Under the pieces are notes generated by a model, which was not told the origin of the DNA, ran no database searches, and saw only the letters and a list, made by a program, of their open reading frames with translations. Positions 1 through 52,001 of a stretch of DNA of 64,000 nucleotides are shown in pieces; within the stretch, counting starts at the first letter, position 1; every line of letters begins with the position of its first letter. The position numbers and the translations under genes are program-made. Source of the stretch: Raja brachyura (Eukaryota); assembly GCA_963514005.1 (NCBI GenBank), contig OY740782.1, forward strand, positions 150,722,001 through 150,786,000, written 5' to 3'.

Positions 1-1304
1 ATTGGGTCACGTCAAGGGTTACCCTCCCCTATAATATTTGTCTGATAAACAGTGGCGAGGGCTTTGCTCAGTATATTAGCAGTACATCCCTCTGCCCTTG
101 TAGAATTGGAACGAGCAATGTTTATGGAGATAACCATGTATTTACCAGTGGTGTCATTGCCCGCGGAGTGACTCCAGCGGATATACCGATAATGCTTAGT
201 GTGATTAAATGGTTAAATCAAGGACGGATTCTATCGGTGCAAAGAAATTGACTTTTGACTGACCTGTCATCGATGTCAGTTCAATAGACATTTTGTAACT
301 TTCTCGGTGCCAGAAACATGGCGACTATTTGTGCATTACCTAGGTGAGGTCTGCTGTGCGATTTTACTAGATTATATGGAAAAATAGAGAAATTCCCTGT
401 ATCTAGCTGCATGTGGCAATAAAGTATCATTGAATCATTGATTTTACTTCGGAGTCACGTGAGTGACTACGTGAAGAAGACCCCGCCTGGCGCTGGAACG
501 GCATTACGTCGACGCTATCGGCAGAGGAAGAGCTGCAGAGCGCAGCTCCAGCACAGCGGTAAGGAAACGGCCCGCAGGTAAGTAAAATTATTTTACTTCC
601 AGGGCGTTTTTCTTAAAACTCCGTAGGCTGGTAGGAAACCAGCAGGAGTTTAAATAAAAATAAAAAATAAAATGTTTTAAAAAGAAAATCGCGGGTAAAA
701 CGTGCGTCCCGGGGTGTAAAAAGTCGGGACAGCAGACTATTGCGGAGCAGGTTCCGGTACCGGTGGCCGATTGAAATACCCGTTAGGGAGCCTTTAGTTG
801 TTCCACAAACAACACTTGAAAACCCAGTGCCTAAAAGTAAAAAGAGGCTTGAAAGGCCTGAGGTTTCTAAAAGATCCTGTAAAGTAAGCCTAAAATTGGC
901 TAAGTATGGATCTAATGGAGGAAATACTCCAAATTATATCAACCAAGGGTCTAAGTACCCAGAATATTCCCAGGCAGCCCCTGAGGGGGTTCCATATCGT
1001 GAATATGGTGCCAATTCGAATTGGGAATTTGAAACCCCAGTGCCTGGGTATGGACTGGAGGAAGTCTCCTTGAACGAGTTTCAGGAGTACCAGGGCTGTA
1101 TGTGACAGACCCTGAAAGTGGTGTTTGTGGTCAGAAGTACCCACCACAATGCAAATCCAGGTGTGTCTGAGGGGCACAAAGTTACTATACCTGGTGGAGG
1201 CGGTGAGGCCATGGAAGGAACCTGGCGGCCAATGTTAATTATATGGTCTCTCACCTGCCTCAAGAAGCTGTTATGGTTGAAACAGCAGATTTGCATTTAA
1301 ACAT

Positions 1305-1370
1305 GTGCTCGCTTCGGCAGCACATATACTAAAATTGGAATAATACAGAATATAATGCATGAAGCATTCT
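1305..1370 (+). ncRNA. RNU6: U6 snRNA fragment (pseudogene) inside the DIRS gag region
   Basis: GTGCTCGCTTCGGCAGCACATATACTAAAATTGGAA (1305-1340) matches vertebrate U6 nt 1-36, then TAATACAGA. TGAAGCATTC (~1360-1369) resembles the U6 3' end, so the copy is internally deleted or truncated. Confidence 0.9.
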
Positions 1371-1819
1371 AAAACACCTTTAAGTAGGTAGCTGGTAAAT
1401 CCGGGTTTTAGGCGCCAATGTCAGCAATTATGCGGGCGCAGGAATTACGATTAAAAGAATCCTCAAACTAATTGGCATCACTGTCTTTTAAGACAAGCTG
1501 GGAAGTTGTGGAATGACTAAAGTTCAGAATGAAACAAAATATGTTAGGTTTATTCTGCAAACTTATTTGAGTTAAATTATATAAATAGAAGATTGCCATT
1601 CGGCCTCTTTTACATCCAAAGATTTACAGGACAAGCAATGTTCAAACTCCTGGTTATTGATTCGGAGAAAATCTGTTTAAGCAAATTAAGTATGGATGAA
1701 GGGGAAGAAACTGTTGGTCTTATGAAACCCTTCAGTTGGCCAGTAGGCTGGTCATATGGAAAAGGGATTTGATTTGAGCCGAGGCAGGAGTATGATAAGG
1801 AAGAATTTCCAGCCAGCAA

Positions 1820-1914
1820 ATCGTTTCTCGGCTTTTTGGCTAAGATTAAGCATGGTATCTGTTCTTATCAGTTTAAATCTGATACGTCCCTTATCTAGGT
1901 ACCATATATTAAAT
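1820..1914 (+). ncRNA. RNU2: U2 snRNA 5' fragment (pseudogene, ~nt 1-95) inside the DIRS gag region
   Basis: ATCGtTTCTCGGCtTTTTGGCTAAGATtAAG...GTATCTGTTCTTATCAGTTTAAATCTGATACGTCCC...ACCATATATTAAAT. Starts at U2 nt 1 and stops just before the Sm site. Confidence 0.9.
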
Positions 1915-1949
1915 AAAATAACGAATGTACACCCACATTTTTGGGTAAG

Positions 1950-4720
1950 GAGGTAATTTCGTCAAACAGTTGGGGAGGTACAAAACTTAATCCTATTTAA
2001 GAAGGATGTTTGGATGAACCTCAGATTGGTGGTAGACTCCAAATGTTGATAATGAAGAGGTATGGATCCATTGGGACACAATAACCTGATCATTCTTCAT
2101 GTTATAGTCTTGGAATAATTCAAATTGACAAAGACGTGAGAATTTGTGTGAGGAAGGAGGTATTGAGAAACAGGAAAGGATCCACAACAATTGTATCAAA
2201 TATTTTCCCCAGGCCATAGAAGATGGGGTTGTACAATCATGTTAGATCTCACACAATTAAATATATTGTCCAGTAAAATTTTTTAAAATGGACACATTCA
2301 ACACTGCAATAGAGCAGGTATCAACAGGTGGTTATGGCTGCAATAAATTGAAGAGATGCATATTTCGGTCCCAATTCACCATAATTTCATAGGTAATTAA
2401 GTTATGGATGAGACAGTTTGTGGTACTACAAGCTTTGCCTTTGAGGATTAAGCCAGCATTTGCACTGCCTTAGGCACAAAAGTACATCGTTATGGCTTAT
2501 CTAGATGACATTTAATTGTCAATGCTAATCAGGAGCCAGGTGGAAAATTAGTCAGTAACTACAAGTTGTTTGAGAAGTTGGGTTCCTGATCCATCCAACA
2601 AATCTAAGTTACAGCAATCCCAAACCATTGAATATCTGGGGTTTGAGATTAACTCAGTTACCATGTTGGTAACTTTACCAATGGATAAGTGTTGGATTTG
2701 ACAAATGTGTGTCAAGACCTGATTTACAAACCTTATCCCTCCATCCGAGAGGTTGCCAAGATTATTGGTAAATTGGCAGCAGCATTTCCAGACAGTAGAG
2801 TTTGGTCGTCTACATTACCAAAATCTTCAAAGGGCAAAAACTCAAGCGCTTATTCAGCGAGCAAGCCATTTGATAGGCCAATGCAATTGCCTAAGGAAGT
2901 TTCATCAGAATTACATTGATGGATTGAGAATGTACCATAAGCTGCTTAGAACTTTTAGTTCATCAGCCAGTAGTGTTTTTGCAAAATGACGAAGTTCTCT
3001 CGGATGGGGGGGGGTGGGGTACGGATAATGAGACCAGCTGTAGAGGCAGATGGGCTGTCCAAGAGGATTTATTGTTCCAAACATATGGTATTAATTATTT
3101 GGAGCTCTTGGTAGCATTTTATGTATTAAAAGCTTATTGCCCTTCATTAAAGGATTTGCATGTCCAAGTACAAATAGATTATACCACAACTGTGGCATAT
3201 ATTAATCACATGGGTGGTGTTAGATCAATATCATGTGATCATCTGGTAAACCAGATGTGCCAATGGTGTATGGCAAAAAATATTTGGCTTTCAGCTATTT
3301 ATCTCTCGGGGAGAGACAATGTTGTGACAGATAAAGATCACAAATATTTGAAGACAATACAGAATGGATGTTTAATCCACACAATTTCAAAATATTGTCA
3401 GTCGGTATGGAGTGCCGGACATTGATCTGTTTGCATCTAGATTGAATCACCAATTGCTCAAATACGTGTCTTGGGGAACACGATCCAGCGGCAGTAGCGG
3501 TGGATGTTTTCTCGCTACACTGGGGAATTTGTTATTTTATGATTTCCCCCATTCTGTCTCATTGGGCAATGTCTCAATAAAAAGCGCAAGACGCTGTCGA
3601 ATGCAATTTTCGTGGTGTCAGATTGGCCCACGCAGTCATGATTCCCATTGATGCTAATATGATTCTTGAACCATGTATGACAATTCCCAGTTGCGACAAT
3701 CTGTTGACACAACCAGTAACAAAAGGAATTCATCCATTGCATGATCATATGTATTTGTTAATCTGCAGGTTCTGACCAGACCATTGCAAGAGTTTGTACT
3801 GTCGGGCAGGACCATGGATGTTATAGTTGCAGCTTGGAGGAATAGCACTAAAACAATATAAGTCGCATATAAGGAAATGGGAAGTGTACACAGTCAAAGA
3901 TATCTTATCATGCTGCAAACATTTCAAATGTATTACAGTTCCTTGCTGGGTTACACTTGATGAGCATTTGAGTATAGTGCCATTAATTGTGCTCGTAGTG
4001 CATTGTCATCCTATTTAGGACAAATTTCAGATCGAGATTCATTGGGTCTCACCCATTAGTATCCCGACTCATGAAAGGAATTTCAATAAAATCATCCCAA
4101 GCCCATATATACAGGAATTTGGGATGTTAGCATTGTTCTCACTTTGTTTAAACAATGGACTCCAATTAATTCAATGTCTTTGCAGAAATTAACATTCAAG
4201 GTGGTAAAGTTAATGGCATTGGTATCAGCTCAAAAAGAGTACAAGCTTTGCAGTTGTACGGTTGGATTGCATGCATGTGACTGCAGATAACATTATGTTT
4301 TATGTTTATGACTTGATCAAACAAAGCAGACCAGGAAGAACTGGAATGAAGGTAATGTTTAAAGCATATCCTATTGATGAAACATTGTGTGTGGTTAAGC
4401 ATTTAACTCAGTACATTGAGGTAACCAAAATCTCAGAGGTTCTGAGAAAGCGTTATTAATAACACACAAAAAGCCACATACAAAAGGTTCAGTTCAAACC
4501 ATTTCTGGATGGTTTGTGTCTAGCAAGAATAGACACTGATGTGTTTAAATCTCACTCCACTAGGGCGGCAGCTACGTCCGTGGCAAAGATACAGGACGTG
4601 CCACTCGATAAAATTTTAGACGCCGCAGGGTGGTCTAGAGAAGAGATTTTCAAAGTTCTAGAATAAACCTGTTGTCACAGTGCCAGGATTTAGACACACA
4701 GTAATGGGTTCTCTTTAATG
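1950..4720 (+). pseudogene. Decayed DIRS RT/RNaseH/methyltransferase and tyrosine recombinase ORFs
   Basis: ORF pieces 2689-2919, 2973-3425, 3412-3651 and 4262-4459 align by eye to the 8166-10175 and 10073-11152 proteins, with many frameshifts and stops. Confidence 0.88.
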
Positions 4721-5311
4721 CTTGCTTTGTTTTATATTATCGATTTATATTATCGATTTATGTTACCATTGACAACATTTATCAATGTATTATGTAATTT
4801 TCCCCTAAGATAGAGGGGTTATTATTAAAAAGTTGTTCTTTTTATGATTAAAGGACTTATTACATAAATTGTAACAATGTCCTAAAATACTATTTACTCA
4901 CTACTGTTTTGACTAAACAGAGAGTCGTATGAAATGAATTTACGACATGAAAAACACAGAGCTTCAAAATCTTCACGTAGTCACTCACGTGACTCCGAAG
5001 TAAAATAGTGAGATTAAACGAGAACTTACCAGTTCGAAGTTTGATCTTTATTTTATGAGGAGTTACGATGAGGGATTACGTGCCCTCCACTCCCAACCCT
5101 CATAATGTAAATGATCATCTGGTAGTTCTAGTCTATTTTGAGCCTTACTATTTTACTTCGGCTATTGGTTTCTGTGTTTTTCATGCCGCTGCTTTGAAGT
5201 ATGCCGTTCCAGCGCCAGGCGGGGTCTTCTTCACGTAATCCCTCATCGTAACTCCTCATAAAATAAAGATCAAACTTCGAACTGGTAAGTTCTCGTTTAA
5301 TCTCACTATTT

Positions 5312-6340
5312 TAGAAACATAGAAACATAGGAAATAGGTGCAGGAGGAGGCCATTCGGCCCTTCAAGCCAGCACCGCCATTCATTGTGATCATGGCTGAT
5401 CGTCCCCAATCAATAACCCGTGCCTGCCTTCCCCCCATATCCCTTGATTCCACTAGCCCCTAGAGCTCTATCTAACTCTCTCTTAAATCCATTCAGTGAT
5501 TTGGCCTCCACTGCCCTCTGTGGCAGGGAATTTGCACAAATTCACAACTCTCTGGGTGAAAGAGTTTTTTCTCACCTCAGTCTTAAATGGCCTCCCCTTT
5601 TTCTAAGACTGTGGCCCCTGGTTCTGGACTCGCCCAACATTGGGAACATTTTTCCTGCATCTAGCTTGTCCAGTCATTTAACCATATAACCATACAACAA
5701 TTACAGCACGGAAACAGGCCCTCTCGGCCCTTCCAGTCCGTGCCGACCTTCCAGTCCGTGACAGTCCTTTTATAATTTTATATGTTTCTATAAGATTGCC
5801 CCTCGTCCTTCTAATCTCCAGTGAATACAAGCCTAGATTTTTCAATCTTTCCTCATATGACAGTCCCGCCATCCCTGGGATCAATCACGTGAACCTACGC
5901 TGCACTGCCTCAATCACAAGGATGTTCTTCATCCTCCAGATGTGGTCTCACCAGAGTCCTATACAACTGCAGAAGAACCTCTCTACTCCTATACTGAAAT
6001 CCTGTTGTTATGAAGGCCAACATTCCATTAGCTTTCTTCACTGCCTGCTGTACCTGCATGCCAACTTTCAGTGACAGGTGTACAAGGACATCCAGGTGTA
6101 CAAGGACTCCCTGTACCTCCCCCTTACCTAACCTAACCCCATTGAGATAATAATCCACCCCCTTGTTTTTGCTGCCAAAATGGATAACCTCACATTTATC
6201 CATATTATACTGCATCTGCCACGCATCTGCCCATTCATTCAACCTGTCCAGGTCACCTCTGCGACCTCCTAACATCCTCTTCACAGTTCACACTGCCACC
6301 CAGCTTTGTGTCATCCACAAACTTGCTAGTGTTGCTCCTA
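5312..6340 (-). mobile_element. CR1 LINE, 3' part (continues at 11637-11970 after the DIRS insertion)
   Basis: RT C-terminal motifs (WQMQYN..KCEVIHFG, LVRPHLE, YSLE.RR.RG) and a (GAAACATA)n tail. A small 3' piece of another CR1 subfamily is nested at ~5680-5760. Confidence 0.88.
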
Positions 6341-7233
6341 ATTTCATTTCGGAGTCACGTGAGTGACTTCGTGAAGAGCCCGCCGGCACGCATGCGCGAC
6401 ATATCGTCGCAACGCATTGCTGCCGACAGCTGGCGGTGGGGCGCGCTCCTCGCCAGCCCTTCAAAAGGAGCCGCTTAGGTAAGTTAAACTAACCTTAAGT
6501 TGGTTGGCCCTTGCTGTCGGTTTTGTCTTTCAGCAAGGGTGCGGTTTGGAGTGTTTGGAAATGTCTGGACGAAGTCGTCGTTTGACCGGCCCGGCGCCAT
6601 CATCGGTTACACCTGGGGCCGGGAAGAGAGCGGGGAAATCATTGCCATCTGCTGCTGCAGGCCGGGACCCGCTGAGTCGCCACAGCTCCGAGGAGGAGTG
6701 CGTGGAGGAGGACGTCGGGGTGCCTCCTGAAAGGGTGGACCCTGCCACAAGTTCGCCTTTGGCGACAACGGGGAAGGGGTCTCGTGCTGCGGCCCGACCC
6801 CCCTCCGCTAGCCCTTCATTAAAAGGCAGCAGAGGAGCCCGTAAGCCTAACCCGGTTCGGGCCAAGGCTCCACCAGCCGCCATGGAGCGGTCTGGTGCAA
6901 CGGCGGGACCTGGGTCGTTAAGGTCTGCTATCCAACTCCCAACCCCCGCTGCCGGGACGGGGGGCTTGGGTACGGTCCCGCCTCGGTCGCCGAGTCCCCC
7001 ATGGACGAGACCATGCGTCGGCACCGTCCAAATTGTGGACAGCCGGCAAGCCCGCGCGGGCGTCGCTCCATGCTTCTGCTGGAGTCGACCCCAAGCCGTC
7101 AGGGCCCTTTGTGGCAACGGCTTCTACTCCTGCCAAGAAGAGGCGGTTGGACACCTTGCCCGCGCGGGACTCGCACGGTTTCGCTGCGGCGGCCTAAAGC
7201 GATCCATTCCGGCACCGAGATCACTTCTCTGAG

Positions 7234-8256
7234 GTGCGGGCCAATGATAGGAGCCCCGGCATGTTTTCTGAGCCAGAGGACTCCGACCATCCAAGTGTTC
7301 AGGATGGGGGGCGTATTGACCGCATCGAGCGGCTGCTGGAGCTGGTACTCCATAATCAACAGCAGTACGCACCCACGGATATCGTCAGGCACAGGGCCAC
7401 CTCGCCGGTTTCCCTCATCAGCGAGCCACAAGGGGAAGAAGGGTTTGACCCCACCCCAACACCGTCGGAGCCACCGACAGCTGAGTTACTGGACGTGGCA
7501 GCCAAATTTGCTGCACCAATTACAACTGGACTTCCGCTCCAGCCAAAGCTGGCAGCAACAGTGGACTTTCTCACGAATCATCGGTTGCAGGAGGAAGTAC
7601 TCTCACAGGCCACTCAGCGCCACAAGGCCCCGTCCAACTGTAATGCCCTCAACGTGCCACTGGTCAATACGCCCATATGGGGCAACATCGGCGTGGCTGT
7701 CCGCCATCAGGAGGTTAAACTCCAGCGGATCCTCAAACTCCTCACGGCCGGTATTACCGCCTTTGCGCGGTCGGTCGATGGAACGGACCTGTCATTGGAT
7801 CAGGAGGATGCGTTAGCACTATTATGTGCCACCCAGCATGAAATCAACGATTTCCGGAAGAACAGCATCCGTCCGTCTATCAACCCAAAATTTGCTGGGT
7901 TGTGTAAGCCACCGCCGCCCCCACCGCCCCGACAACTCTTCGGGGAAGACCTTCCGAAGAGGGTCAAGGAGCTGGACGAGGTAGCCAAAACGGTGGGACT
8001 TATGCGATCTCAGATCGCCCCCAGACCGATGGTGCCAAAAGCTCCCCCTGCTCGACCGCGAGGTCCGGTCGCATCAGCATCAAGACCATATGCTACTACT
8101 CAGCACTACTACCAACAGGGCCAGCAGCAGCGGTCTTTTTTAGGGTCAGGCACACAGCGACCCCAGTGGAAGATGAAGCCATCTTATCGTCAGCCCAACC
8201 CAGCACCTCCTCGGCCACCCAAGTATGTCAGGGACCGCCGGTGGCCATGGAGGTAA
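7234..8256 (+). CDS. DIRS gag-like ORF1, C-terminal conserved part (the N-terminus from ATG 6561 appears disrupted)
   Basis: Position upstream of pol, low-complexity N-terminus and homology to the decayed copy. The same frame has a TAA at 7195-7197 after an AKKRRL NLS-like motif. Confidence 0.75.
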   Translation: MRANDRSPGMFSEPEDSDHPSVQDGGRIDRIERLLELVLHNQQQYAPTDIVRHRATSPVSLISEPQGEEGFDPTPTPSEPPTAELLDVAAKFAAPITTGLPLQPKLAATVDFLTNHRLQEEVLSQATQRHKAPSNCNALNVPLVNTPIWGNIGVAVRHQEVKLQRILKLLTAGITAFARSVDGTDLSLDQEDALALLCATQHEINDFRKNSIRPSINPKFAGLCKPPPPPPPRQLFGEDLPKRVKELDEVAKTVGLMRSQIAPRPMVPKAPPARPRGPVASASRPYATTQHYYQQGQQQRSFLGSGTQRPQWKMKPSYRQPNPAPPRPPKYVRDRRWPWR

Positions 8257-10175
8257 GGCGGTCTGGGTTTCTTTCCCCTGCCCCTTTAATCTCACATGTG
8301 GGAGGGCGACTCCGGTTCTTTGCTAAAGCTTGGGTATCAGTTACTTCGGATAAATTTGTTTTACAAAATATTCGGGGTCATTCTATTGAATTTATTCACG
8401 GCAACATTCCTCCATCCCAGCATATGCCTAAACGGAAGTTTACGCTGTCTGCTGTTGAGCAGGCAGCAGGCACGGCTGAAATTTTTCGTTTGGAACAAAA
8501 AGGCGTGATAGAGAAAACTATTCACGAGCCCATTGAATTCGTCTCCAATATATTTACTAGACCAAAAAAGGATGGAGGTTGTCGGGTAATTATTGATTTG
8601 ACCCAGTTGAATACCTTTGTAACATATACACATTTCAAAATGGACACCTTTGAGACAGCCAAATCACTGATTTCGCATGGTTGCTTTATGGCATGTATTG
8701 ATTTAAAAGATGCATACTATTCAGTGTCTACCCGGAAACATCACCGCAAATTTTTGAAATTTGTCTGGATGGATCAGCTCTGGCAATATCGAGCCTTACC
8801 AAATGGGCTTACTACTGCCCCTAGGCTCTTTACTAAATTACTTAAACCTATTATGGCCAAATTACGCATAGAACATCACATTGTAATGGCTTATTTGGAT
8901 GATATTCTGATTATTGGCAATACTCTGGAAGCAGCTGAAAGCGCTGTTTCAGCAACTGTTACTATATTTCAGCAACTGGGGTTTATAGTTCATCCAGAAA
9001 AATCGAAGTTTCACCCATCCCAGGTTATGGATTATTTGGGTTTCACGGTGGACTCTATTCAAATGAGGGCCACCATTCCATTTCACAAGGTGGAGGATGT
9101 CTCCCTTGCATGTCAGGATCTCGCATCCGCCAGTATACCATCTATTCGGCATACAGCTAAGATAATTGGGAAAATCGTAGCTTTATTTCCGGCAGCCCGG
9201 TTTGGGCCTTTGCATTATCAAAACCTGCAAAGGGCCAAAATTATTGCGTTAAAAAAGAACGCTGGTCATTTTGACAGACCTGTGGAGCTGCCTTCTGATG
9301 CTAAGGTTGAGCTACAATGGTGGGTGTCCAATATTGGTAGGGCATTCAAACCCATTGTTGTGCCCAATCCGGTGGTATATTTGCAAACTGACGCAAGCTC
9401 TCTAGGCTGGGGAGCTGCGGACAGCTCTTCTAGTTGTGGAGGCAGGTGGGATCCCCTTGAAGCTAGCATGTTGCTAATACAAGGGATTAACTATTTGGAG
9501 CTGCTTGCAGCATTTCACGGACTGCGGGCATATTGTGCTCATCTTAGTGGTACTCATGTCCGTCTCCAAATAGACAACACCACAGCGGTGGCATATTTAA
9601 ACCATATGGGCGGTACCAGGTCAGTCTCTTGTGACAAATTGGCTAATACTATTTGGTGCTGGTGTATTGATCGAGATATTTGGATTTCAGCCACCTATTT
9701 GCCAGGTAGGCTTAATACTGTGGCAGACACCAGGTCACGCAAATTCAATGATAGTATTGAGTGGATGCTGCATCCTCAAATATTTGCCCAAATTACAGCC
9801 AAATTTGGCCAACCGGATATCGACCTTTTTGCGTCCCGGTTGAACCATCAGGTACCGACATATGTTTCATGGGAACCAGACCCTGGGGCATTAGCGATTG
9901 ATGCATTCTCGCTAGACTGGGGGAAGTGGTTTTTCTATGCATTCCCCCCGTTTTGCCTCATCAGTCGGGTATTACAAAAAATCAGGATGGATTCTGCCAG
10001 AGGCATTCTTGTCATACCCGACTGGCCTACACAGCCTTGGTATCCGGTGGTCTCTGACATGATTAGTCAACCTTGGGTCCCTCTAGAGGGTTGCCCGCAT
10101 GTGGTTTCTCACCCTGTCTCAGGGGAGTTACACCCCTGCCATGCCTATCTAAAATTACTGGCTTGCAGGTTCTGA
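8166..10175 (+). CDS. DIRS pol: reverse transcriptase, RNase H and DAM-like methyltransferase domain (likely ATG at 8247)
   Basis: IDLKDAYY, LPNGL, YLDD (RT); TDAS, INYLELLA, IDNTT (RNase H); IDLFAS, YAFPPF (MT). Uninterrupted 669 aa. Confidence 0.95.
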   Translation: MEDEAILSSAQPSTSSATQVCQGPPVAMEVRRSGFLSPAPLISHVGGRLRFFAKAWVSVTSDKFVLQNIRGHSIEFIHGNIPPSQHMPKRKFTLSAVEQAAGTAEIFRLEQKGVIEKTIHEPIEFVSNIFTRPKKDGGCRVIIDLTQLNTFVTYTHFKMDTFETAKSLISHGCFMACIDLKDAYYSVSTRKHHRKFLKFVWMDQLWQYRALPNGLTTAPRLFTKLLKPIMAKLRIEHHIVMAYLDDILIIGNTLEAAESAVSATVTIFQQLGFIVHPEKSKFHPSQVMDYLGFTVDSIQMRATIPFHKVEDVSLACQDLASASIPSIRHTAKIIGKIVALFPAARFGPLHYQNLQRAKIIALKKNAGHFDRPVELPSDAKVELQWWVSNIGRAFKPIVVPNPVVYLQTDASSLGWGAADSSSSCGGRWDPLEASMLLIQGINYLELLAAFHGLRAYCAHLSGTHVRLQIDNTTAVAYLNHMGGTRSVSCDKLANTIWCWCIDRDIWISATYLPGRLNTVADTRSRKFNDSIEWMLHPQIFAQITAKFGQPDIDLFASRLNHQVPTYVSWEPDPGALAIDAFSLDWGKWFFYAFPPFCLISRVLQKIRMDSARGILVIPDWPTQPWYPVVSDMISQPWVPLEGCPHVVSHPVSGELHPCHAYLKLLACRF

Positions 10176-11152
10176 CCAGGCCATGGATGCAGTATGGCCT
10201 TACCACCCGGACCATGAACACCATTGGAGCATCATGCCGAGAGTCAACCAGGCGGAGATATCTCTCCCACATCACCAAGTGGGAAGCCTACTGCAGTCGC
10301 TCTCACATCACCTATGACGATGTCTCCATAGCCGACGTCCTGGAATTCCTCGCGGGGTTGCACCATGATGAGCACTTGAGTTATAGTGCCATCAACAGCG
10401 CCAGGAGTGCGCTATCATTCTACCTCAACATCGAGGTAGGATCGAACAGGCTAGTGTCCAGGCTTATGCGGGGAATATTCAATCTGAATCCGCCTACACC
10501 ACGCTACAACATCACCTGGGATGTCAGGGATGTACTTACCCTGCTCAGGTCGTGGTCACCTATGGAAGGGTTACAGCTGGACCAACTCACTATGAAATTG
10601 GTGATGCTACTAGCGCTGACTTCAGCACAGCGGGTTCAGACGCTCCACAAACTACGTATTGACAGGATGACGTCGACCCCTGGAGAAGTAGTCTTTTTCA
10701 TCGATGAGCTACTTAAGCAGCATAGACCTGGGTGCACAGGGCTGCAGCTGAAGTTCCCGGCATACCCTGCAGATGCTCGGCTATGTTTAGCCACTCACAT
10801 CCGTTACTACATCAAGGTGACGAGGAGCATCAGAGGAATGGAGTTGTACCTGCTTGTCACTCACAAAAGACCTCACCATCGAGTGACAGTCCAGACGATA
10901 TCCAGGTGGCTCCGGATCGTCCTGGCTAAGGCAGGTATTGACACTAATGTGTTTAAATCCCACTCCACCAGGGCTGCATCTACGTCGGCGGCGAGGGTCA
11001 TGGAGGTACCCATGGACCATATCCTCGCCACAGCAGGATGGTCGAATGAAGCTGTGTTCCAGCGTTTCTATAATAAGCCTGTTGCTGCTCCCCTTCAGTT
11101 TGCAGAGGCCGTGCTGAACGCCGGGTGTGAACGTGGGGATGTCCCTGATTGA
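10073..11152 (+). CDS. DIRS tyrosine recombinase
   Basis: SAQR, HSTRAAS, GW and FQRFY catalytic motifs; overlaps the end of pol. Confidence 0.95.
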   Translation: MGPSRGLPACGFSPCLRGVTPLPCLSKITGLQVLTRPWMQYGLTTRTMNTIGASCRESTRRRYLSHITKWEAYCSRSHITYDDVSIADVLEFLAGLHHDEHLSYSAINSARSALSFYLNIEVGSNRLVSRLMRGIFNLNPPTPRYNITWDVRDVLTLLRSWSPMEGLQLDQLTMKLVMLLALTSAQRVQTLHKLRIDRMTSTPGEVVFFIDELLKQHRPGCTGLQLKFPAYPADARLCLATHIRYYIKVTRSIRGMELYLLVTHKRPHHRVTVQTISRWLRIVLAKAGIDTNVFKSHSTRAASTSAARVMEVPMDHILATAGWSNEAVFQRFYNKPVAAPLQFAEAVLNAGCERGDVPD

Positions 11153-11636
11153 AAGGGCGTTATTTGTGGTGTTATTAATAAATCTTTTTCTGTTTCAGTA
11201 TAACCTCGTTTCATCAACTTGTTTACTCCAAGCCATCCTTGCTAGTGGTGTGTCCGCATGGACGTTGTCCAGGGCGTGTAATCACAGAAGCTTTGAAGTC
11301 TTCACGAAGTCACTCACGTGACTCCGAAATGAAATAGTAAGATTGAACGAGAACTTACCAAGTTTGAAGGTTGATCTTTATTTCATGAGGAGTTGCGGTG
11401 AGGGATTTTGTGCCCTCCGCTCCCAACCCTCGATCATCTTCAGCTGGTAATTAGAGTCTCTTTAAATCTTACTATGCCAAGTCATTTCTGTTGTTGTTTC
11501 TGTGATTCCACACCGCTGCTTTGAAGAATGTCGCGCATGCGTGCCGGCGGGCTCTTCACGAAATCCCTCACCGCAACTCCTCATGAAATAAAGATCAACC
11601 TTCAAACTTGGTAAGTTCTCGTTCAATCTTACTATT

Positions 11637-18337: not shown

Positions 18338-21072
18338 ACCATATAACCATATAACAATTACAGCACGGAAACAGGCCTTCTCGGCCCTTCCAGTCCATGC
18401 CGACCATTTATTTTCCTCTAGTCCCATCTACCTGCACTCAGACCATACCCCTCAATTCCCTTCCCGTCCATATACCTATCCACTTTACTTTTAAATGTTA
18501 CAATCGATCCTGCCTCCACCACTTCTGCTGGAAGATCATTCCACACAGCCACCACTCTCTGAGTAAAGAAGTTCCCCCTCATGTTACCCCTAAACTTCTG
18601 TCCCTTAATTCTCATGTCATGCCCCCTTGTTTGAATCTTCCCTAACCTCAATGGGAAAAGCTTATCCACGTCAACTCTGTCTATCCCTTTCACTATTTAA
18701 AAAACCTCAATCAAGTCCCCCCTTAACCTTCTGTGCTCCAAAGAATAAAGACCCAACTTGTTCAACCTTTCTCTGTAACTTAGTTGCTGGAACCCAGGCA
18801 CCATTCTAGTAAATCTCCTCTGTACTCTCTCTATTTTGTTGACATCCTTCCTATAATTAAGCGACCAAAATTGTACACCATACTCCAGAATTGGTCTTAC
18901 CAATGCCTTGTACAAATTTAACATTACTTCCCTACTCCTATATTCAATGCTCTGATTTATAAAGGCCAGCACACCAAAAGCTTTCTTTACCACCCTATCT
19001 ACATGCGATTCCACCTTCAGGGAACTATGCACAGTTATTCCTAGATCCCTCTGTTCCACAGCATTCCTCAATTCCCTACCATTTACCATGTACGTCCTAT
19101 TTTGATTTGTCCTGCCAAGATGTAGCACCTCACACTTATCAGCATTAAACTCCATCTGCCATCTTTCAGCCCACTCTTCCAAATGGCCCAAATCTCTCTG
19201 TAGACTTTGAAAATCTACTTCATTATCCACAGCACCCCCTATCTTAGTATCATCTGCATACTTACTTATCCAAGTTTCCACCCCATCATCTAGATCATTG
19301 ATGTACATGACAAACAACAGTGGACCCAACACCGATCCCTGAGGCACCCCACTGGTCACCGGCTTCCAACCTGACAAACAGCCATCCACCATTACTCTCT
19401 GGCATCTCCCATTAAGCCACTGTTGAATCCATCTTGCTACTCCACCATTAACACCCAAAGATTGAACCTTCTTAACCAACCTTCCATGGGGAACCTTGTC
19501 AAAGGCCTTACTGAAATTCATGTAGACAACATCCACTGCTTTACCCTCATTAATTTCCCTTGTAACCTCTTCAAAAAATTCAAGAAGGTTTGTCAAACAT
19601 GACCTTCCAGGCACAAATCCATGTTGACTGTTCTTGATCAGACCCTGTTTATCCAGATGCTTATATATATTATCTCTAAGTATCCTTTCCATTAATTTGC
19701 CCACCACCGACGTCAAACTAACAGGTCTATAATTGCTAGGTTTATTCTTTGAACCCTTTTTAAACATGCGCAGTACGCCAATCCTCTGGCACTATTCCCG
19801 TTTCTAATGACATCTGAAATATTTCTGTCATAGCCCCTGCTATTTCTACACTAACTTCCCTCAATGTCTTAGGGAATATCCTGTCTGGACCTGGAGACTT
19901 ATCCACTTTTATATTTTTCAAAAGTGTCAGTACTTCCACCTCTTTGAATCTCATAGTTTCCATAGCTACTCTACTTTTTTCCCTTACCTCACAGAGCTCA
20001 ATATCCTTCTCCTTGGTGAATACCGAAGTAAAGAAATTGTTCAATATCTCCCCCATCTCTTTTGGCTCTGCAGATAGCTGTCCATTCTGGCTCTCTAATG
20101 GTCCAATTTTATCCCTCATTATCCTTTTGCTATTAATATAGCTGTAGAAACCCTTTTGATTTACTTTCACCTTTCTTGCCAAAGCAACCTCATATCTTCT
20201 TTTAGCTTTTCTTATTTCTTTCTTAAGATTCTTTTTACACTTTATACTCCTCTAGCACCTCATTTACTCCGTGCCTCCTATAATTATTGTAGATATCTCT
20301 CTTTTTTCGAATCAAGTGTCCAATTTCCCTTGAAAACCATGGCTCTTTCCGATTTTAACTATTTCCTTTCAATCGAACAGGGACATAAAGATTCTGTACT
20401 CTTACAATTTCCCCTTTAAATGTCCTCCATTTCTCTTCTACATCCTTCCCATAAAACAAAATGTCCCAATTCACTCCTTTTAAATCATTACGCATTCCCT
20501 CAAAGTTAGCCTTTCTCCAATCAAAAATCTCAACCCTAGGTCCAGTTCTGACTCTCTCCATAATTATATTGTAACTAATGGTATTGTGATCACTGGTCCC
20601 GAAGTGCTCACCAACGCATACCTCCGTCACCTGACCTGCCTCATTTCCTCACAGGAGGTCCAGCACTGCCCCTTCTCTGGTCGATACCTCTACGTATTGC
20701 TGCAAAAAACTATCCTGCACACATTTAACAAACTCCAAACCATCCAGCCCATTTACAGAATGTGTTTCCCAGTCTATTTTTGGAAAATTGAAATCTCCCA
20801 CAATCACTACCTTGTGCTTACTACTAATATCTGCTATCTCCTTACATATTAGCTCTTCCAATTCTCGCTCCCCATTTGGCGGTCTATAATACACCCCAAA
20901 AAGTGTTGCTACACCGTTCCCACTTCTCAGTTCCACCCAAATAGCCTCCCTAGACGAGCCCTCTAATCTATCCTGCCATAGCACTGCTGTAATATCTTCT
21001 CTGACAAGCAATGCAACCCCTCCACCTCTGGTCCCTCCAATTCTATCACACCTGAAGCAACGAAATCCTTGA
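18338..21072 (-). mobile_element. CR1 LINE ORF2 (APE endonuclease and RT), 5'-truncated and frameshifted
   Basis: ORFs 20649-21083 (GVYYRPP, GDFNFP), 20355-20630 (SDHN), 19760-20182 (KSPGPD), 18697-19767 (YRPVSLTS, QGSVLGP, YADD). Confidence 0.93.
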
Positions 21073-40090: not shown

Positions 40091-40333
40091 ATATGGAGGA
40101 CATGTGACAAATACATGTATGTTGATATTGGAATGTGTAGGAAAGAACTGCAGATGCTGCTTCCAATGGAAGCTAGACACAAAATCCTGGAGTAACTCAG
40201 CGGGACAGGCAGCATCTCTGGAGGTCTGAAGAAGAGTCTCGACCCAAAACGTCACACATTCCTTGTCTCCAGAGATGCTGCCTGTCCCGCTGAGTTTCTC
40301 CAGCATTTTGTGTCCACCTAACAATGAAGGCAG

Positions 40334-51799: not shown

Positions 51800-52001
51800 N
51801 NNNNNNNNNNNNNNNNNNNNNNNNNNNNNNNNNNNNNNNNNNNNNNNNNNNNNNNNNNNNNNNNNNNNNNNNNNNNNNNNNNNNNNNNNNNNNNNNNNNN
51901 NNNNNNNNNNNNNNNNNNNNNNNNNNNNNNNNNNNNNNNNNNNNNNNNNNNNNNNNNNNNNNNNNNNNNNNNNNNNNNNNNNNNNNNNNNNNNNNNNNNN
52001 N
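51800..52001. other. Assembly gap (N run) followed by a CA/CT microsatellite
   Basis: 202 Ns. Confidence 0.99.

What the first reader, a model, noticed from the sequence alone, without database searches (positions are those of the whole stretch)
1299..1920. A DIRS retrotransposon carrying captured U6 and U2 snRNA fragments in its gag region
Seen: a U6 fragment (1305-1370) and a U2 fragment (1820-1914) lie ~450 bp apart inside one DIRS. Both are in the element's sense orientation and both start exactly at snRNA nt 1. The U6 piece interrupts recognisable gag homology (LAANVNYMVSHLPQEAV...HL | LVNP). U2 stops just before its Sm site. Neither has a poly(A) tail. Established: LINE machinery makes snRNA pseudogenes and U6-L1 chimeras, and U2 and U6 pair in the active spliceosome. 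Inference: two independent genomic insertions into a young 5-kb element are unlikely. Capture by template switching during DIRS reverse transcription, followed by family-wide amplification, fits better. I am not aware of snRNA cargo being described in DIRS elements.
Basis: partly seen in the sequence, partly recalled or inferred. Interest (0 to 1): 0.8.

Follow-up and report, generated by a model that had tools for sequence, protein, structure and literature searches.

The report
Old snRNA fragments riding a DIRS
A skate DIRS retrotransposon that can no longer make its own proteins carries decayed 5' pieces of the U6 and U2 spliceosomal RNAs, picked up before its last jump and copied along as passengers; this is a curiosity of known retroelement behaviour, not a new system.

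Summary
Rfam finds U2 nt 1 to about 96 at 1820-1914 (81 bits, gathering score 46). It finds U6 nt 1-43 at 1305-1349 (29.6 bits, below gathering). Both lie in sense orientation in the gag region of a complete DIRS (441-5313), and the other 58.6 kb has no snRNA-like hit.

The element is not simply "young". Its inverted repeats and internal complementary region (ICR) are perfect (0 mismatches in 156 paired nt). Yet pol and the tyrosine recombinase (YR) gene carry 22 stops and at least 5 frame changes, so it is a coding-dead, trans-mobilised copy.

The U2 piece has lost invariant positions, including the branch-site box. On that internal clock the fragments predate the last transposition and travelled with the element. 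That supports "carried cargo".

How they got in is open. Starting at nt 1, 3' truncation and no poly(A) are also hallmarks of ordinary LINE-made "tailless" snRNA pseudogenes. I favour template switching during DIRS reverse transcription (about 0.5) over LINE-made insertions into a progenitor (about 0.3). Reasons: two inserts 450 nt apart, both sense, no detectable target-site duplications (a low-power test).

Another first-reader note (s1-881401, unchecked) reports a U2 5' half at the same boundary in another DIRS of this genome.

The parts
441..5313 (+). DIRS-A: structurally complete, coding-dead DIRS retrotransposon that hosts both snRNA pieces
   Evidence: ITR and ICR geometry. tblastn of DIRS-B gag, pol and YR gives homology in sense orientation with 22 stops and at least 5 frame changes.
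441..504 (+). Left inverted terminal repeat. 441-477 is repeated in the ICR and 468-504 in the right ITR.
   Evidence: 37/37 identity to the reverse complement of 4970-5006 and 37/37 to the reverse complement of 5201-5237. CpG o/e 0.9-1.3.
1222..1296 (+). Gag homology block directly upstream of the U6 piece
   Evidence: tblastn to DIRS-B gag aa 106-130, 36% identity, E 0.073 (marginal).
1305..1349 (+). U6 snRNA fragment, nt 1-43, decayed (ACAGAGA box altered)
   Evidence: cmscan RF00026, 29.6 bits, E 2e-4, model positions 1-43.
1350..1375 (+). Uncertain tail of the U6 insert (possible U6 3'-end remnant) ending in AAAA
   Evidence: By eye and from memory only. Rfam finds nothing in 1351-1420.
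1393..1727 (+). Gag homology between the two inserts (several frames, with stops)
   Evidence: DIRS-B gag aa 161-192 match 1444-1533 (z 5). Weaker tblastn blocks: aa 209-245 match 1589-1690 and aa 247-258 match 1692-1727 (each E 0.094). The LVNP motif at 1393 is by eye.
1820..1914 (+). U2 snRNA fragment, nt 1 to about 96, ending in the single-stranded A-rich stretch before the Sm site. Branch-site box mutated and stem IIb pairs broken.
   Evidence: cmscan RF00004, 81.2 bits (gathering 46), E 2e-14, with 4 non-canonical pairs flagged.
1915..1921 (+). Short A-rich run (AAAATAA) after the U2 piece
   Evidence: Read directly. Compatible with a T/AAAA LINE endonuclease site or with chance.
2200..3772 (+). 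Decayed pol (RT, RNase H, methyltransferase region)
   Evidence: tblastn to DIRS-B pol, E 1e-60, frames 1, 2, 1, 3, 2, with 14 stops summed over HSPs, some of which overlap.
3763..4654 (+). Decayed tyrosine recombinase gene
   Evidence: tblastn to DIRS-B YR, E 8e-44, two frames, 8 stops.
4970..5082 (+). Internal complementary region (circle-junction copy of both termini)
   Evidence: Reverse complement of 441-477 (37/37) plus reverse complement of 5232-5313 (82/82).
5201..5313 (+). Right inverted terminal repeat

Best explanation
DIRS-A (441-5313) belongs to a coding-dead DIRS lineage that proteins of an autonomous relative, such as the intact DIRS-B next to it, mobilise in trans. An ancestor of this copy acquired 5' pieces of U6 and U2 snRNA in its gag region. 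They have since been copied with the element as neutral, decaying passengers.

Most likely route (inferred): while the DIRS reverse transcriptase copied the element's RNA into minus-strand cDNA, it switched onto co-packaged or nearby snRNAs at an internal single-stranded site. It ran to their 5' ends, which forces the next switch exactly at nt 1, and returned to the DIRS RNA close to where it left. This is the 'patch insertion' or LTR-mediated retroposition mechanism, here in a tyrosine-recombinase retroelement.

Shown: both fragments are real, sense-oriented and start at nt 1; gag is co-linear on both sides; the fragments are older than the last transposition; their functional motifs have decayed.

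Inferred: trans-mobilisation, the template-switch route, and presence in other copies.
For: Fragments and orientation.

Carried through transposition: the repeats regenerated each cycle are 0/156 mismatched. The ICR is the template for the termini and DIRS RT acts in trans (PMC7192593). The interior has 22 stops, at least 5 frame changes and CpG o/e 0.1-0.4, against 0.9-1.3 in the termini. The U2 piece has 7 or more changes in 66 near-invariant nt and 4 broken stem pairs. The chance of 0 differences in just the 119 ICR/termini pairs at 8% per-lineage decay is 2e-9.

Termini of DIRS-A and DIRS-B are 89-92% alike, against 66-70% in coding DNA.

Route: both inserts are sense (1 in 4 for independent insertions). 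They are 450 nt apart, while 58.6 kb of flanking window has no snRNA-like hit. No significant target-site duplication at either insert.

Retroviruses package U6 and pre-U2 and patch host RNA into recombinants (PMC4997597). LTR elements capture host RNAs by template switching, sometimes two per event (PMC5131818). The LINE seen locally is CR1-like, with an 8-nt repeat tail (the CR1 assignment is from my knowledge). That is a stringent type, which rarely makes tailless pseudogenes (PMC4476161).

The 901-nt stretch is held at 0.32-0.78 of its 31-mers in 10 coded organisms. An unchecked note, s1-881401, reports a U2 5' half at the gag/RT boundary of another DIRS in this genome.
Against: No second copy could be read, so neither family-wide presence nor junction microhomology was seen.

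The TSD test had only 5-50% power at the implied decay.

Gag is almost co-linear across the U6 site, which a simple insertion predicts more naturally than an out-and-back switch.

U2 ends in its single-stranded A-rich segment and is followed by T/AAAA-like sequence. Published LINE-made truncated snRNA pseudogenes end in single-stranded purine-rich segments next to a TTTT/A-like site.

The 31-mer shares could reflect orthologous loci, or the DIRS parts alone.

The clock assumes a canonical snRNA source and no gene conversion of the repeats.
Confidence: 0.5

Rival explanations
1. Two ordinary LINE-made, 3'-truncated 'tailless' snRNA retropseudogenes inserted independently into a genomic progenitor copy of this DIRS lineage. 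That copy then served as a source for further trans-mobilised copies, including this one.
For: Start at nt 1, 3' truncation in a single-stranded purine-rich segment and lack of poly(A) define the majority class (65%) of snRNA copies in mammals. U2 copies there essentially never have poly(A) (PMC4476161). U2 here ends at ...UUAAAU followed by AAAATAA, a T/AAAA-like site. Gag is co-linear on both sides of U6. A weak 10/13-14 direct match flanks U2: 1803-1816 against 1923-1936.
Against: It needs two independent hits within 450 nt of one 5-kb element, both in sense orientation. No other snRNA-like hit lies in 58.6 kb. No significant TSD: P 0.17-0.33 for U2 and 0.33-0.83 for U6. The LINE visible here is CR1-like and stringent; for stringent LINEs 3'-truncated snRNA copies were not detected.
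Confidence: 0.3
2. The snRNA pieces inserted into this particular genomic copy after it integrated. They would be private to this locus.
For: It is the default for nested repeats. I could not read any other copy.
Against: The element's regenerated repeats are 156/156 identical, while the U2 piece is about 10% decayed at invariant positions. That combination has probability about 1e-9 or less if the decay happened in place. The unchecked note s1-881401 reports a like U2 piece in another DIRS.
Confidence: 0.05
3. The fragments were captured at the DNA level as cDNA filler during double-strand-break repair or recombination in a progenitor copy. Neither DIRS RT switching nor LINE endonuclease would be involved.
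For: No TSD and no poly(A). Gag is co-linear around U6.
Against: There is no direct evidence. It needs two such events, both in sense orientation. It also gives no reason for exact nt-1 ends beyond full-length cDNA.
Confidence: 0.07
4. The snRNA pieces are selected cargo. They might act as a U2/U6 mimic that tunes splicing of the element's own introns, or helps packaging.
For: U2 lies 25-55 nt upstream of a GGTAAG-type 5' splice-site-like motif that both DIRS share. Other first-reader notes propose that these DIRS are spliced (unchecked). A U2 piece is reported at the same boundary in another DIRS (unchecked).
Against: The U2 branch-site box GUAGUA reads GCAUGGUA, 4 stem IIb pairs are broken without compensation, and the U6 ACAGAGA box is altered. 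The intact DIRS-B has no snRNA-like sequence. The host copy is coding-dead.
Confidence: 0.04

Closest known systems
3'-truncated ('tailless', Group III) snRNA retropseudogenes made by L1 template choice (Doucet et al. 2015, PMC4476161)
   Same: They begin at snRNA nt 1. They are cut off at a single-stranded purine-rich segment. They have no poly(A). Both U2 and U6 are affected.
   Different: Those are flanked by target-site duplications and a TTTT/A site in 70-100% of cases. Here no significant duplication is found. Two different snRNAs also sit in one element, both in its sense orientation, in a genome region where the visible LINE is CR1-like.
LTR-mediated retroposition: host retrocopies embedded in LTR retrotransposons by microsimilarity-dependent template switching (Tan et al. 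2016, PMC5131818)
   Same: A host RNA copy lies inside a retroelement, co-oriented with it and without its own duplications. Sometimes there are two parental RNAs in one chimera.
   Different: The host here is a tyrosine-recombinase (DIRS) element, not an LTR element. The cargo is snRNA 5' pieces, not mRNA. The flanking element sequence is nearly continuous. Microsimilarity could not be tested.
Retroviral packaging and reverse transcription of U6 and other snRNAs, and patch insertion of host ncRNA into recombinants (Giles et al. 2004; Hajjar and Linial 1993; both as reviewed in PMC4997597)
   Same: U6 and pre-U2 are among the packaged RNAs. Host ncRNA pieces (7SL) have been found patched into a retroviral recombinant, and packaged snRNAs have been proposed as a source of pseudogenes.
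   Different: Nothing is known about RNA packaging by DIRS gag. The Giles paper itself was not held, so it is cited through reviews.
U6/L1 chimeric retrocopies (Buzdin 2002 and Garcia-Perez 2007, as summarised in PMC4476161)
   Same: An RT template switch ends at the exact 5' end of U6.
   Different: There the U6 forms the 5' end of the whole insertion and is followed by a 5'-truncated L1 with poly(A) and duplications. Here the element continues on both sides.
SINEU: SINEs with U1- or U2-derived heads (Kojima 2015, PMC4494074)
   Same: A U2 5' part is propagated as part of a mobile element.
   Different: SINEU has a SINE body and a LINE-matching tail after the head. Here DIRS sequence resumes within about 30-55 nt and the carrier is a 4.9-kb DIRS.

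Membership tests
DIRS (DIRS1-like tyrosine-recombinase retrotransposon) | Inverted terminal repeats plus an internal complementary region that repeats both outer termini side by side | tested here: met
   441-477 matches the reverse complement of 4970-5006 (37/37). 5232-5313 matches the reverse complement of 5001-5082 (82/82). 468-504 matches the reverse complement of 5201-5237 (37/37).
DIRS (DIRS1-like tyrosine-recombinase retrotransposon) | Gag, RT/RNase H/methyltransferase and tyrosine recombinase genes in that order | tested here: met
   tblastn with the intact neighbour's proteins gives pol E 1e-60 and YR E 8e-44. Gag blocks are marginal by tblastn (E 0.07-0.09), with one local alignment at z 5. 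All lie on the + strand, but with 22 stops and at least 5 frame changes, so the copy is not autonomous.
U2 snRNA (Rfam RF00004) | Score above the curated gathering threshold | tested here: met
   81.2 bits against 46.
U2 snRNA (Rfam RF00004) | Complete functional RNA: branch-site box, Sm site and 3' stem-loops | tested here: not met
   Only nt 1 to about 96 are present. The branch-site box is mutated, the Sm site and 3' half are absent, and 4 stem IIb pairs are broken. It is a pseudogene fragment.
U6 snRNA (Rfam RF00026) | Score above the curated gathering threshold | tested here: not met
   29.6 bits against 44, with model positions 1-43 only. It is a clear homologue of the 5' 43 nt, not a gene.
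LINE-made 3'-truncated snRNA retropseudogene (Group III) | Starts at snRNA nt 1 and is truncated in a single-stranded purine-rich segment, without poly(A) | tested here: met
   Model start is 1 for both. U2 ends at ...UUAAAU before the Sm site. There is no poly(A).
LINE-made 3'-truncated snRNA retropseudogene (Group III) | Flanking target-site duplication | tested here: inconclusive
   The best flanking matches are not above chance (U6 P 0.33-0.83, U2 P 0.17-0.33). The power of the test is only 0.05-0.5 at 10-13% decay.
Template-switch chimera (LTR-mediated retroposition type) | Host RNA copy internal to the retroelement, co-oriented, without its own duplication | tested here: met
   Both pieces are sense, with gag on both sides and no significant duplication. 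The absence of duplication is weak evidence.
Template-switch chimera (LTR-mediated retroposition type) | Microsimilarity at fusion points and a discontinuity of the element sequence, seen against an insert-free relative | not testable with these tools
   No close insert-free relative was available.
SINEU (snRNA-headed SINE) | snRNA head followed by a SINE body and a LINE-derived tail | tested here: not met
   A motif at the gag end that DIRS-B shares lies about 30-55 nt after the U2 piece. There is no SINE body.

The most novel reading that the evidence does not exclude
Skate DIRS elements are reverse-transcribed while their spliced or splicing RNA is still bound to U2/U6, or with these snRNAs packaged. 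So spliceosomal snRNA 5' parts would be captured repeatedly at preferred sites such as the gag/pol boundary, in more than one DIRS lineage. The U2 piece next to the shared 5' splice-site-like motif might then be kept because it affects splicing or packaging of the element.
Probability: 0.05. Interest if true: 0.75.

Novelty: new member of a known kind. Interest (0 to 1): 0.35.

Why it matters
If the template-switch route is confirmed, this would be the first sequence evidence that a tyrosine-recombinase (DIRS) retroelement picks up host small RNAs during reverse transcription. That would say which RNAs are near or packaged with DIRS RNA, a replication cycle for which even the primer is unknown (PMC7192593).

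In practice it matters for annotation. U2 and U6 'pseudogene' counts in skate genomes will be inflated by every copy of this DIRS lineage. The inserts also make handy markers for tracing a non-autonomous DIRS subfamily.

If the inserts are ordinary LINE-made pseudogenes in a progenitor copy, the case is only a nested-repeat curiosity.

Tried and rejected
1. Read laying on 900-2300 with four runs. Local scripts on the closed machine read the window file for the flank statistics and for building the local tblastn target.

3. The search for homologous proteins with the 66-aa ORF that reads through U2 gave no candidate. This is uninformative, because even real U2 genes have no called ORFs there.

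4. Metagenome scans, with the shared ITR pattern and the DIRS-A RNase H ORF, both returned nothing.

6. Rfam on 1351-1420, to confirm a U6 3' remnant, gave no hit.

7. SINEU-type insertion was rejected.

8. A single composite U6-X-U2 insertion was rejected, because 1393-1727 is DIRS gag.

9. One-cycle hypermutation as the cause of the dead ORFs was rejected. There are frame changes and indels, and both C>T and G>A changes.

10. Giles et al. 2004 was not held.
Full report
**What is there**

Rfam scanning of the whole window gives one hit above a gathering score. It is U2 at 1820-1937 (81.2 bits, gathering 46, E 2e-14, + strand, model start 1). The real alignment covers U2 nt 1 to about 96 (window 1820-1914). 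The rest of the model is skipped.

A permissive scan of 1-6000 adds U6 at 1305-1349 (29.6 bits, E 2e-4, model positions 1-43, + strand). This is below the gathering score of 44, because only the 5' 43 nt are present. I see a resemblance of 1353-1372 to the U6 3' end, but only from memory.

No snRNA-like hit at E<0.1 exists in the other 58.6 kb.

**The host element**

Positions 441-5313 form a textbook DIRS, which I call DIRS-A.
- The first 37 nt (441-477) recur as a reverse complement at 4970-5006.
- The last 82 nt (5232-5313) recur as a reverse complement at 5001-5082. So 4970-5082 is the internal complementary region (ICR), holding the circle junction.
- Positions 468-504 are the reverse complement of 5201-5237.
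- All three pairs are 100% identical, 156 paired nt in all.

A second DIRS, DIRS-B (6341-11636), is intact. Its gag is 340 aa, pol 669 aa and the tyrosine recombinase (YR) 359 aa. It has the same repeat geometry and no snRNA-like sequence.

tblastn with the DIRS-B proteins shows that gag, pol and YR of DIRS-A lie on the + strand. So both snRNA pieces are in the element's sense orientation.

Gag homology lies on both sides of the U6 piece.
- DIRS-B gag aa 106-130 match 1222-1296 (E 0.073).
- By eye, aa 145-164 match 1393-1456.
- aa 161-192 match 1444-1533 (z 5).
- aa 209-258 match 1589-1727 (E 0.094).

The stretch 1297-1392 (96 nt) stands for about 14 gag residues (42 nt) of DIRS-B. So roughly 45-70 nt of U6-derived sequence was added with little loss of gag.

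The U2 piece lies in the poorly conserved C-terminal gag region. It sits 25-55 nt upstream of a GGTAAG-type motif that both elements have at the gag end. Its borders cannot be defined against DIRS-B.

The sequence between the two snRNA pieces is DIRS gag. They are therefore two inserts, not one composite insert.

**Age**

That is only half right.

Against DIRS-B, the pol and YR regions of DIRS-A carry 22 in-frame stops (summed over HSPs, some overlapping) and use at least five frame changes. The interior has CpG o/e of 0.1-0.4. The termini and ICR keep CpG o/e of 0.9-1.3.

Yet the repeats show no mismatch in 156 paired nt. In the DIRS cycle the ICR is the template from which the termini are rebuilt at each round. 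The ICR is essential, and the DIRS-1 reverse transcriptase can act in trans on truncated elements (PMC7192593). ICR/termini identity therefore works like LTR-LTR identity as a clock of integration. Taking just the 119 ICR/termini pairs, the 95% upper bound on pairwise divergence is 2.5%.

So this copy integrated recently, from a lineage whose genes were already dead. It is a non-autonomous DIRS.

Its termini resemble those of DIRS-B much better than its coding DNA does. Termini are 89-92% identical over 37-80 nt, and 79% over 369 nt at the 3' end. Coding DNA is 66-70% identical. This fits trans-mobilisation by DIRS-B-like proteins, which is an inference.

**The inserts are older than the last jump**

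Within U2 nt 1-66 the fragment departs from the Rfam consensus at 7 or more positions. Five are highly conserved ones, among them three in the branch-site region, where GUGUAGUA reads GCAUGGUA. Four pairs of stem IIb are broken. In the U6 piece the conserved ...AACGAUACAGAGA stretch is altered.

If about 8-10% decay had accumulated in place after integration, the chance of seeing no difference in even 119 paired repeat positions is about 2e-9 or less. So the snRNA pieces were already in the RNA that was reverse-transcribed to make this copy. This is the best-supported new point, and it argues against a private, post-integration insertion.

Caveats: the argument assumes that the source was a canonical snRNA and that gene conversion does not homogenise the repeats.

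**Evidence from elsewhere is thin**

The run index holds the 901-nt stretch 1150-2050 at 0.32-0.78 of its 31-mers in runs of ten coded organisms, across 12 studies. That fits a widespread, little-diverged family. Orthologous loci, or the DIRS parts alone, could give the same numbers.

Two metagenome scans were empty. The protein word search through the U2 ORF found nothing.

The scan's own notes hold an unchecked first-reader note on another piece of this genome: "U2 snRNA 5' half captured at the gag/RT boundary of DIRS C", s1-881401. It is a lead that agrees with carriage, not a test. Follow-up notes on other windows call the genome a skate.

**How the pieces got in**

In mammals 65% of snRNA copies are 3'-truncated and start at nt 1. 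They are cut in single-stranded purine-rich segments, lack poly(A) (U2: 0% with poly(A)), and are made by L1 'template choice'. In 70-100% of cases they have target-site duplications (TSDs) and a TTTT/A site (PMC4476161).

The U2 piece here ends at ...UUAAAU followed by AAAATAA, which looks like such a junction.

I tested for duplications three ways.
- Ungapped, junction-anchored search with two scoring schemes: U6 P 0.33-0.45, U2 P 0.17-0.33.
- Gapped local alignment against nulls from the DIRS-A interior and from the rest of the window: U6 P 0.79-0.83, U2 P 0.22-0.28.
- Best candidate for U2: 10 matches in 13-14 nt, 1803-1816 against 1923-1936.

Nothing is significant. But planted 10-15-nt duplications decayed by 10-13% per copy are recovered only 5-50% of the time. 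So this is inconclusive.

For template switching by the DIRS enzyme:
- Both pieces are sense, a 1 in 4 chance for independent insertions.
- Two different snRNAs lie 450 nt apart, while 58.6 kb around has none.
- Exact nt-1 ends are what a forced switch at the end of a template gives.
- Retroviruses package U6 (about one per virion) and pre-U2, and host small RNAs get patched into recombinants (PMC4997597).
- LTR elements of flies, fish and birds capture host RNAs by microsimilarity-dependent switching, sometimes two per event (PMC5131818).
- The LINE visible next to the element is CR1-like with an 8-nt repeat tail (the CR1 assignment is from my knowledge). For stringent LINEs, 3'-truncated snRNA copies were not detected.

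Against it:
- The near co-linearity of gag across the U6 site.
- The LINE-like look of the U2 3' junction.

I put template switching at about 0.5 and LINE-made insertions into a progenitor at about 0.3. Break-repair capture gets about 0.07, a private post-integration insertion about 0.05, and selected function about 0.04.

**Function**

The branch-site box, stem IIb and the ACAGAGA box are all degraded without compensation. The intact DIRS-B lacks any snRNA piece. So in this copy the fragments behave as neutral passengers.

**Comparison and novelty**

Full-text searches found no paper linking DIRS elements with snRNA cargo. Both candidate mechanisms are known kinds: tailless snRNA pseudogenes, and LTR or retroviral template-switch capture. 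Doucet et al. already mention snRNA copies associated with LTR elements.

I therefore file this as a new member of a known kind. It is of moderate interest for DIRS biology and for repeat and snRNA annotation in cartilaginous fishes.

Noticed in passing
window 6341-11636: Apparently intact DIRS (DIRS-B). It has gag 7234-8256, pol 8166-10175 and YR 10073-11152 as open frames. Its ICR/termini are perfect (37/37 and 76/76). It is GC-rich and CpG-rich, unlike DIRS-A, and is a candidate autonomous partner for DIRS-A.
   Followed up: partly
window 5314-6340 and 11637-about 12100 (minus strand): A CR1-like LINE is split by the DIRS-B insertion. Its RT motifs continue across the DIRS-B borders. Its 3' tail of 8-nt repeats abuts the right end of DIRS-A, so three retroelements are nested or adjacent here.
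   Followed up: partly
window 438-504, 4952-5313 vs 6341-6377, 11280-11636: The termini and ICR of DIRS-A and DIRS-B are much more alike (79-92%) than their coding regions (66-70%). The termini of dead DIRS-A keep normal CpG content while its interior is CpG-depleted. This suggests selection on cis-acting ends in a non-autonomous lineage.
   Followed up: partly
window 1944-1952, 1975-1981 and 8253-8261; also 575-583 and 6476-6484: Consensus-like 5' splice-site motifs (AG/GTAAG) sit in the leader and at the gag end of both DIRS. Other first-reader notes on this genome propose that these DIRS are spliced. I did not test this.
   Followed up: no
window 40190-40300: An imperfect hairpin gives sub-threshold Rfam hits on both strands (Plastid-psbJ-4, mir-9186). 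It is probably a small palindromic repeat.
   Followed up: no
window 18700-19767 (minus strand): A 356-aa ORF with a reverse transcriptase domain (RVT_1, E 5e-35). It is another LINE-type element.
   Followed up: no
window 51800-52001: A run of 202 N, either an assembly gap or masked. I left it alone.
   Followed up: no
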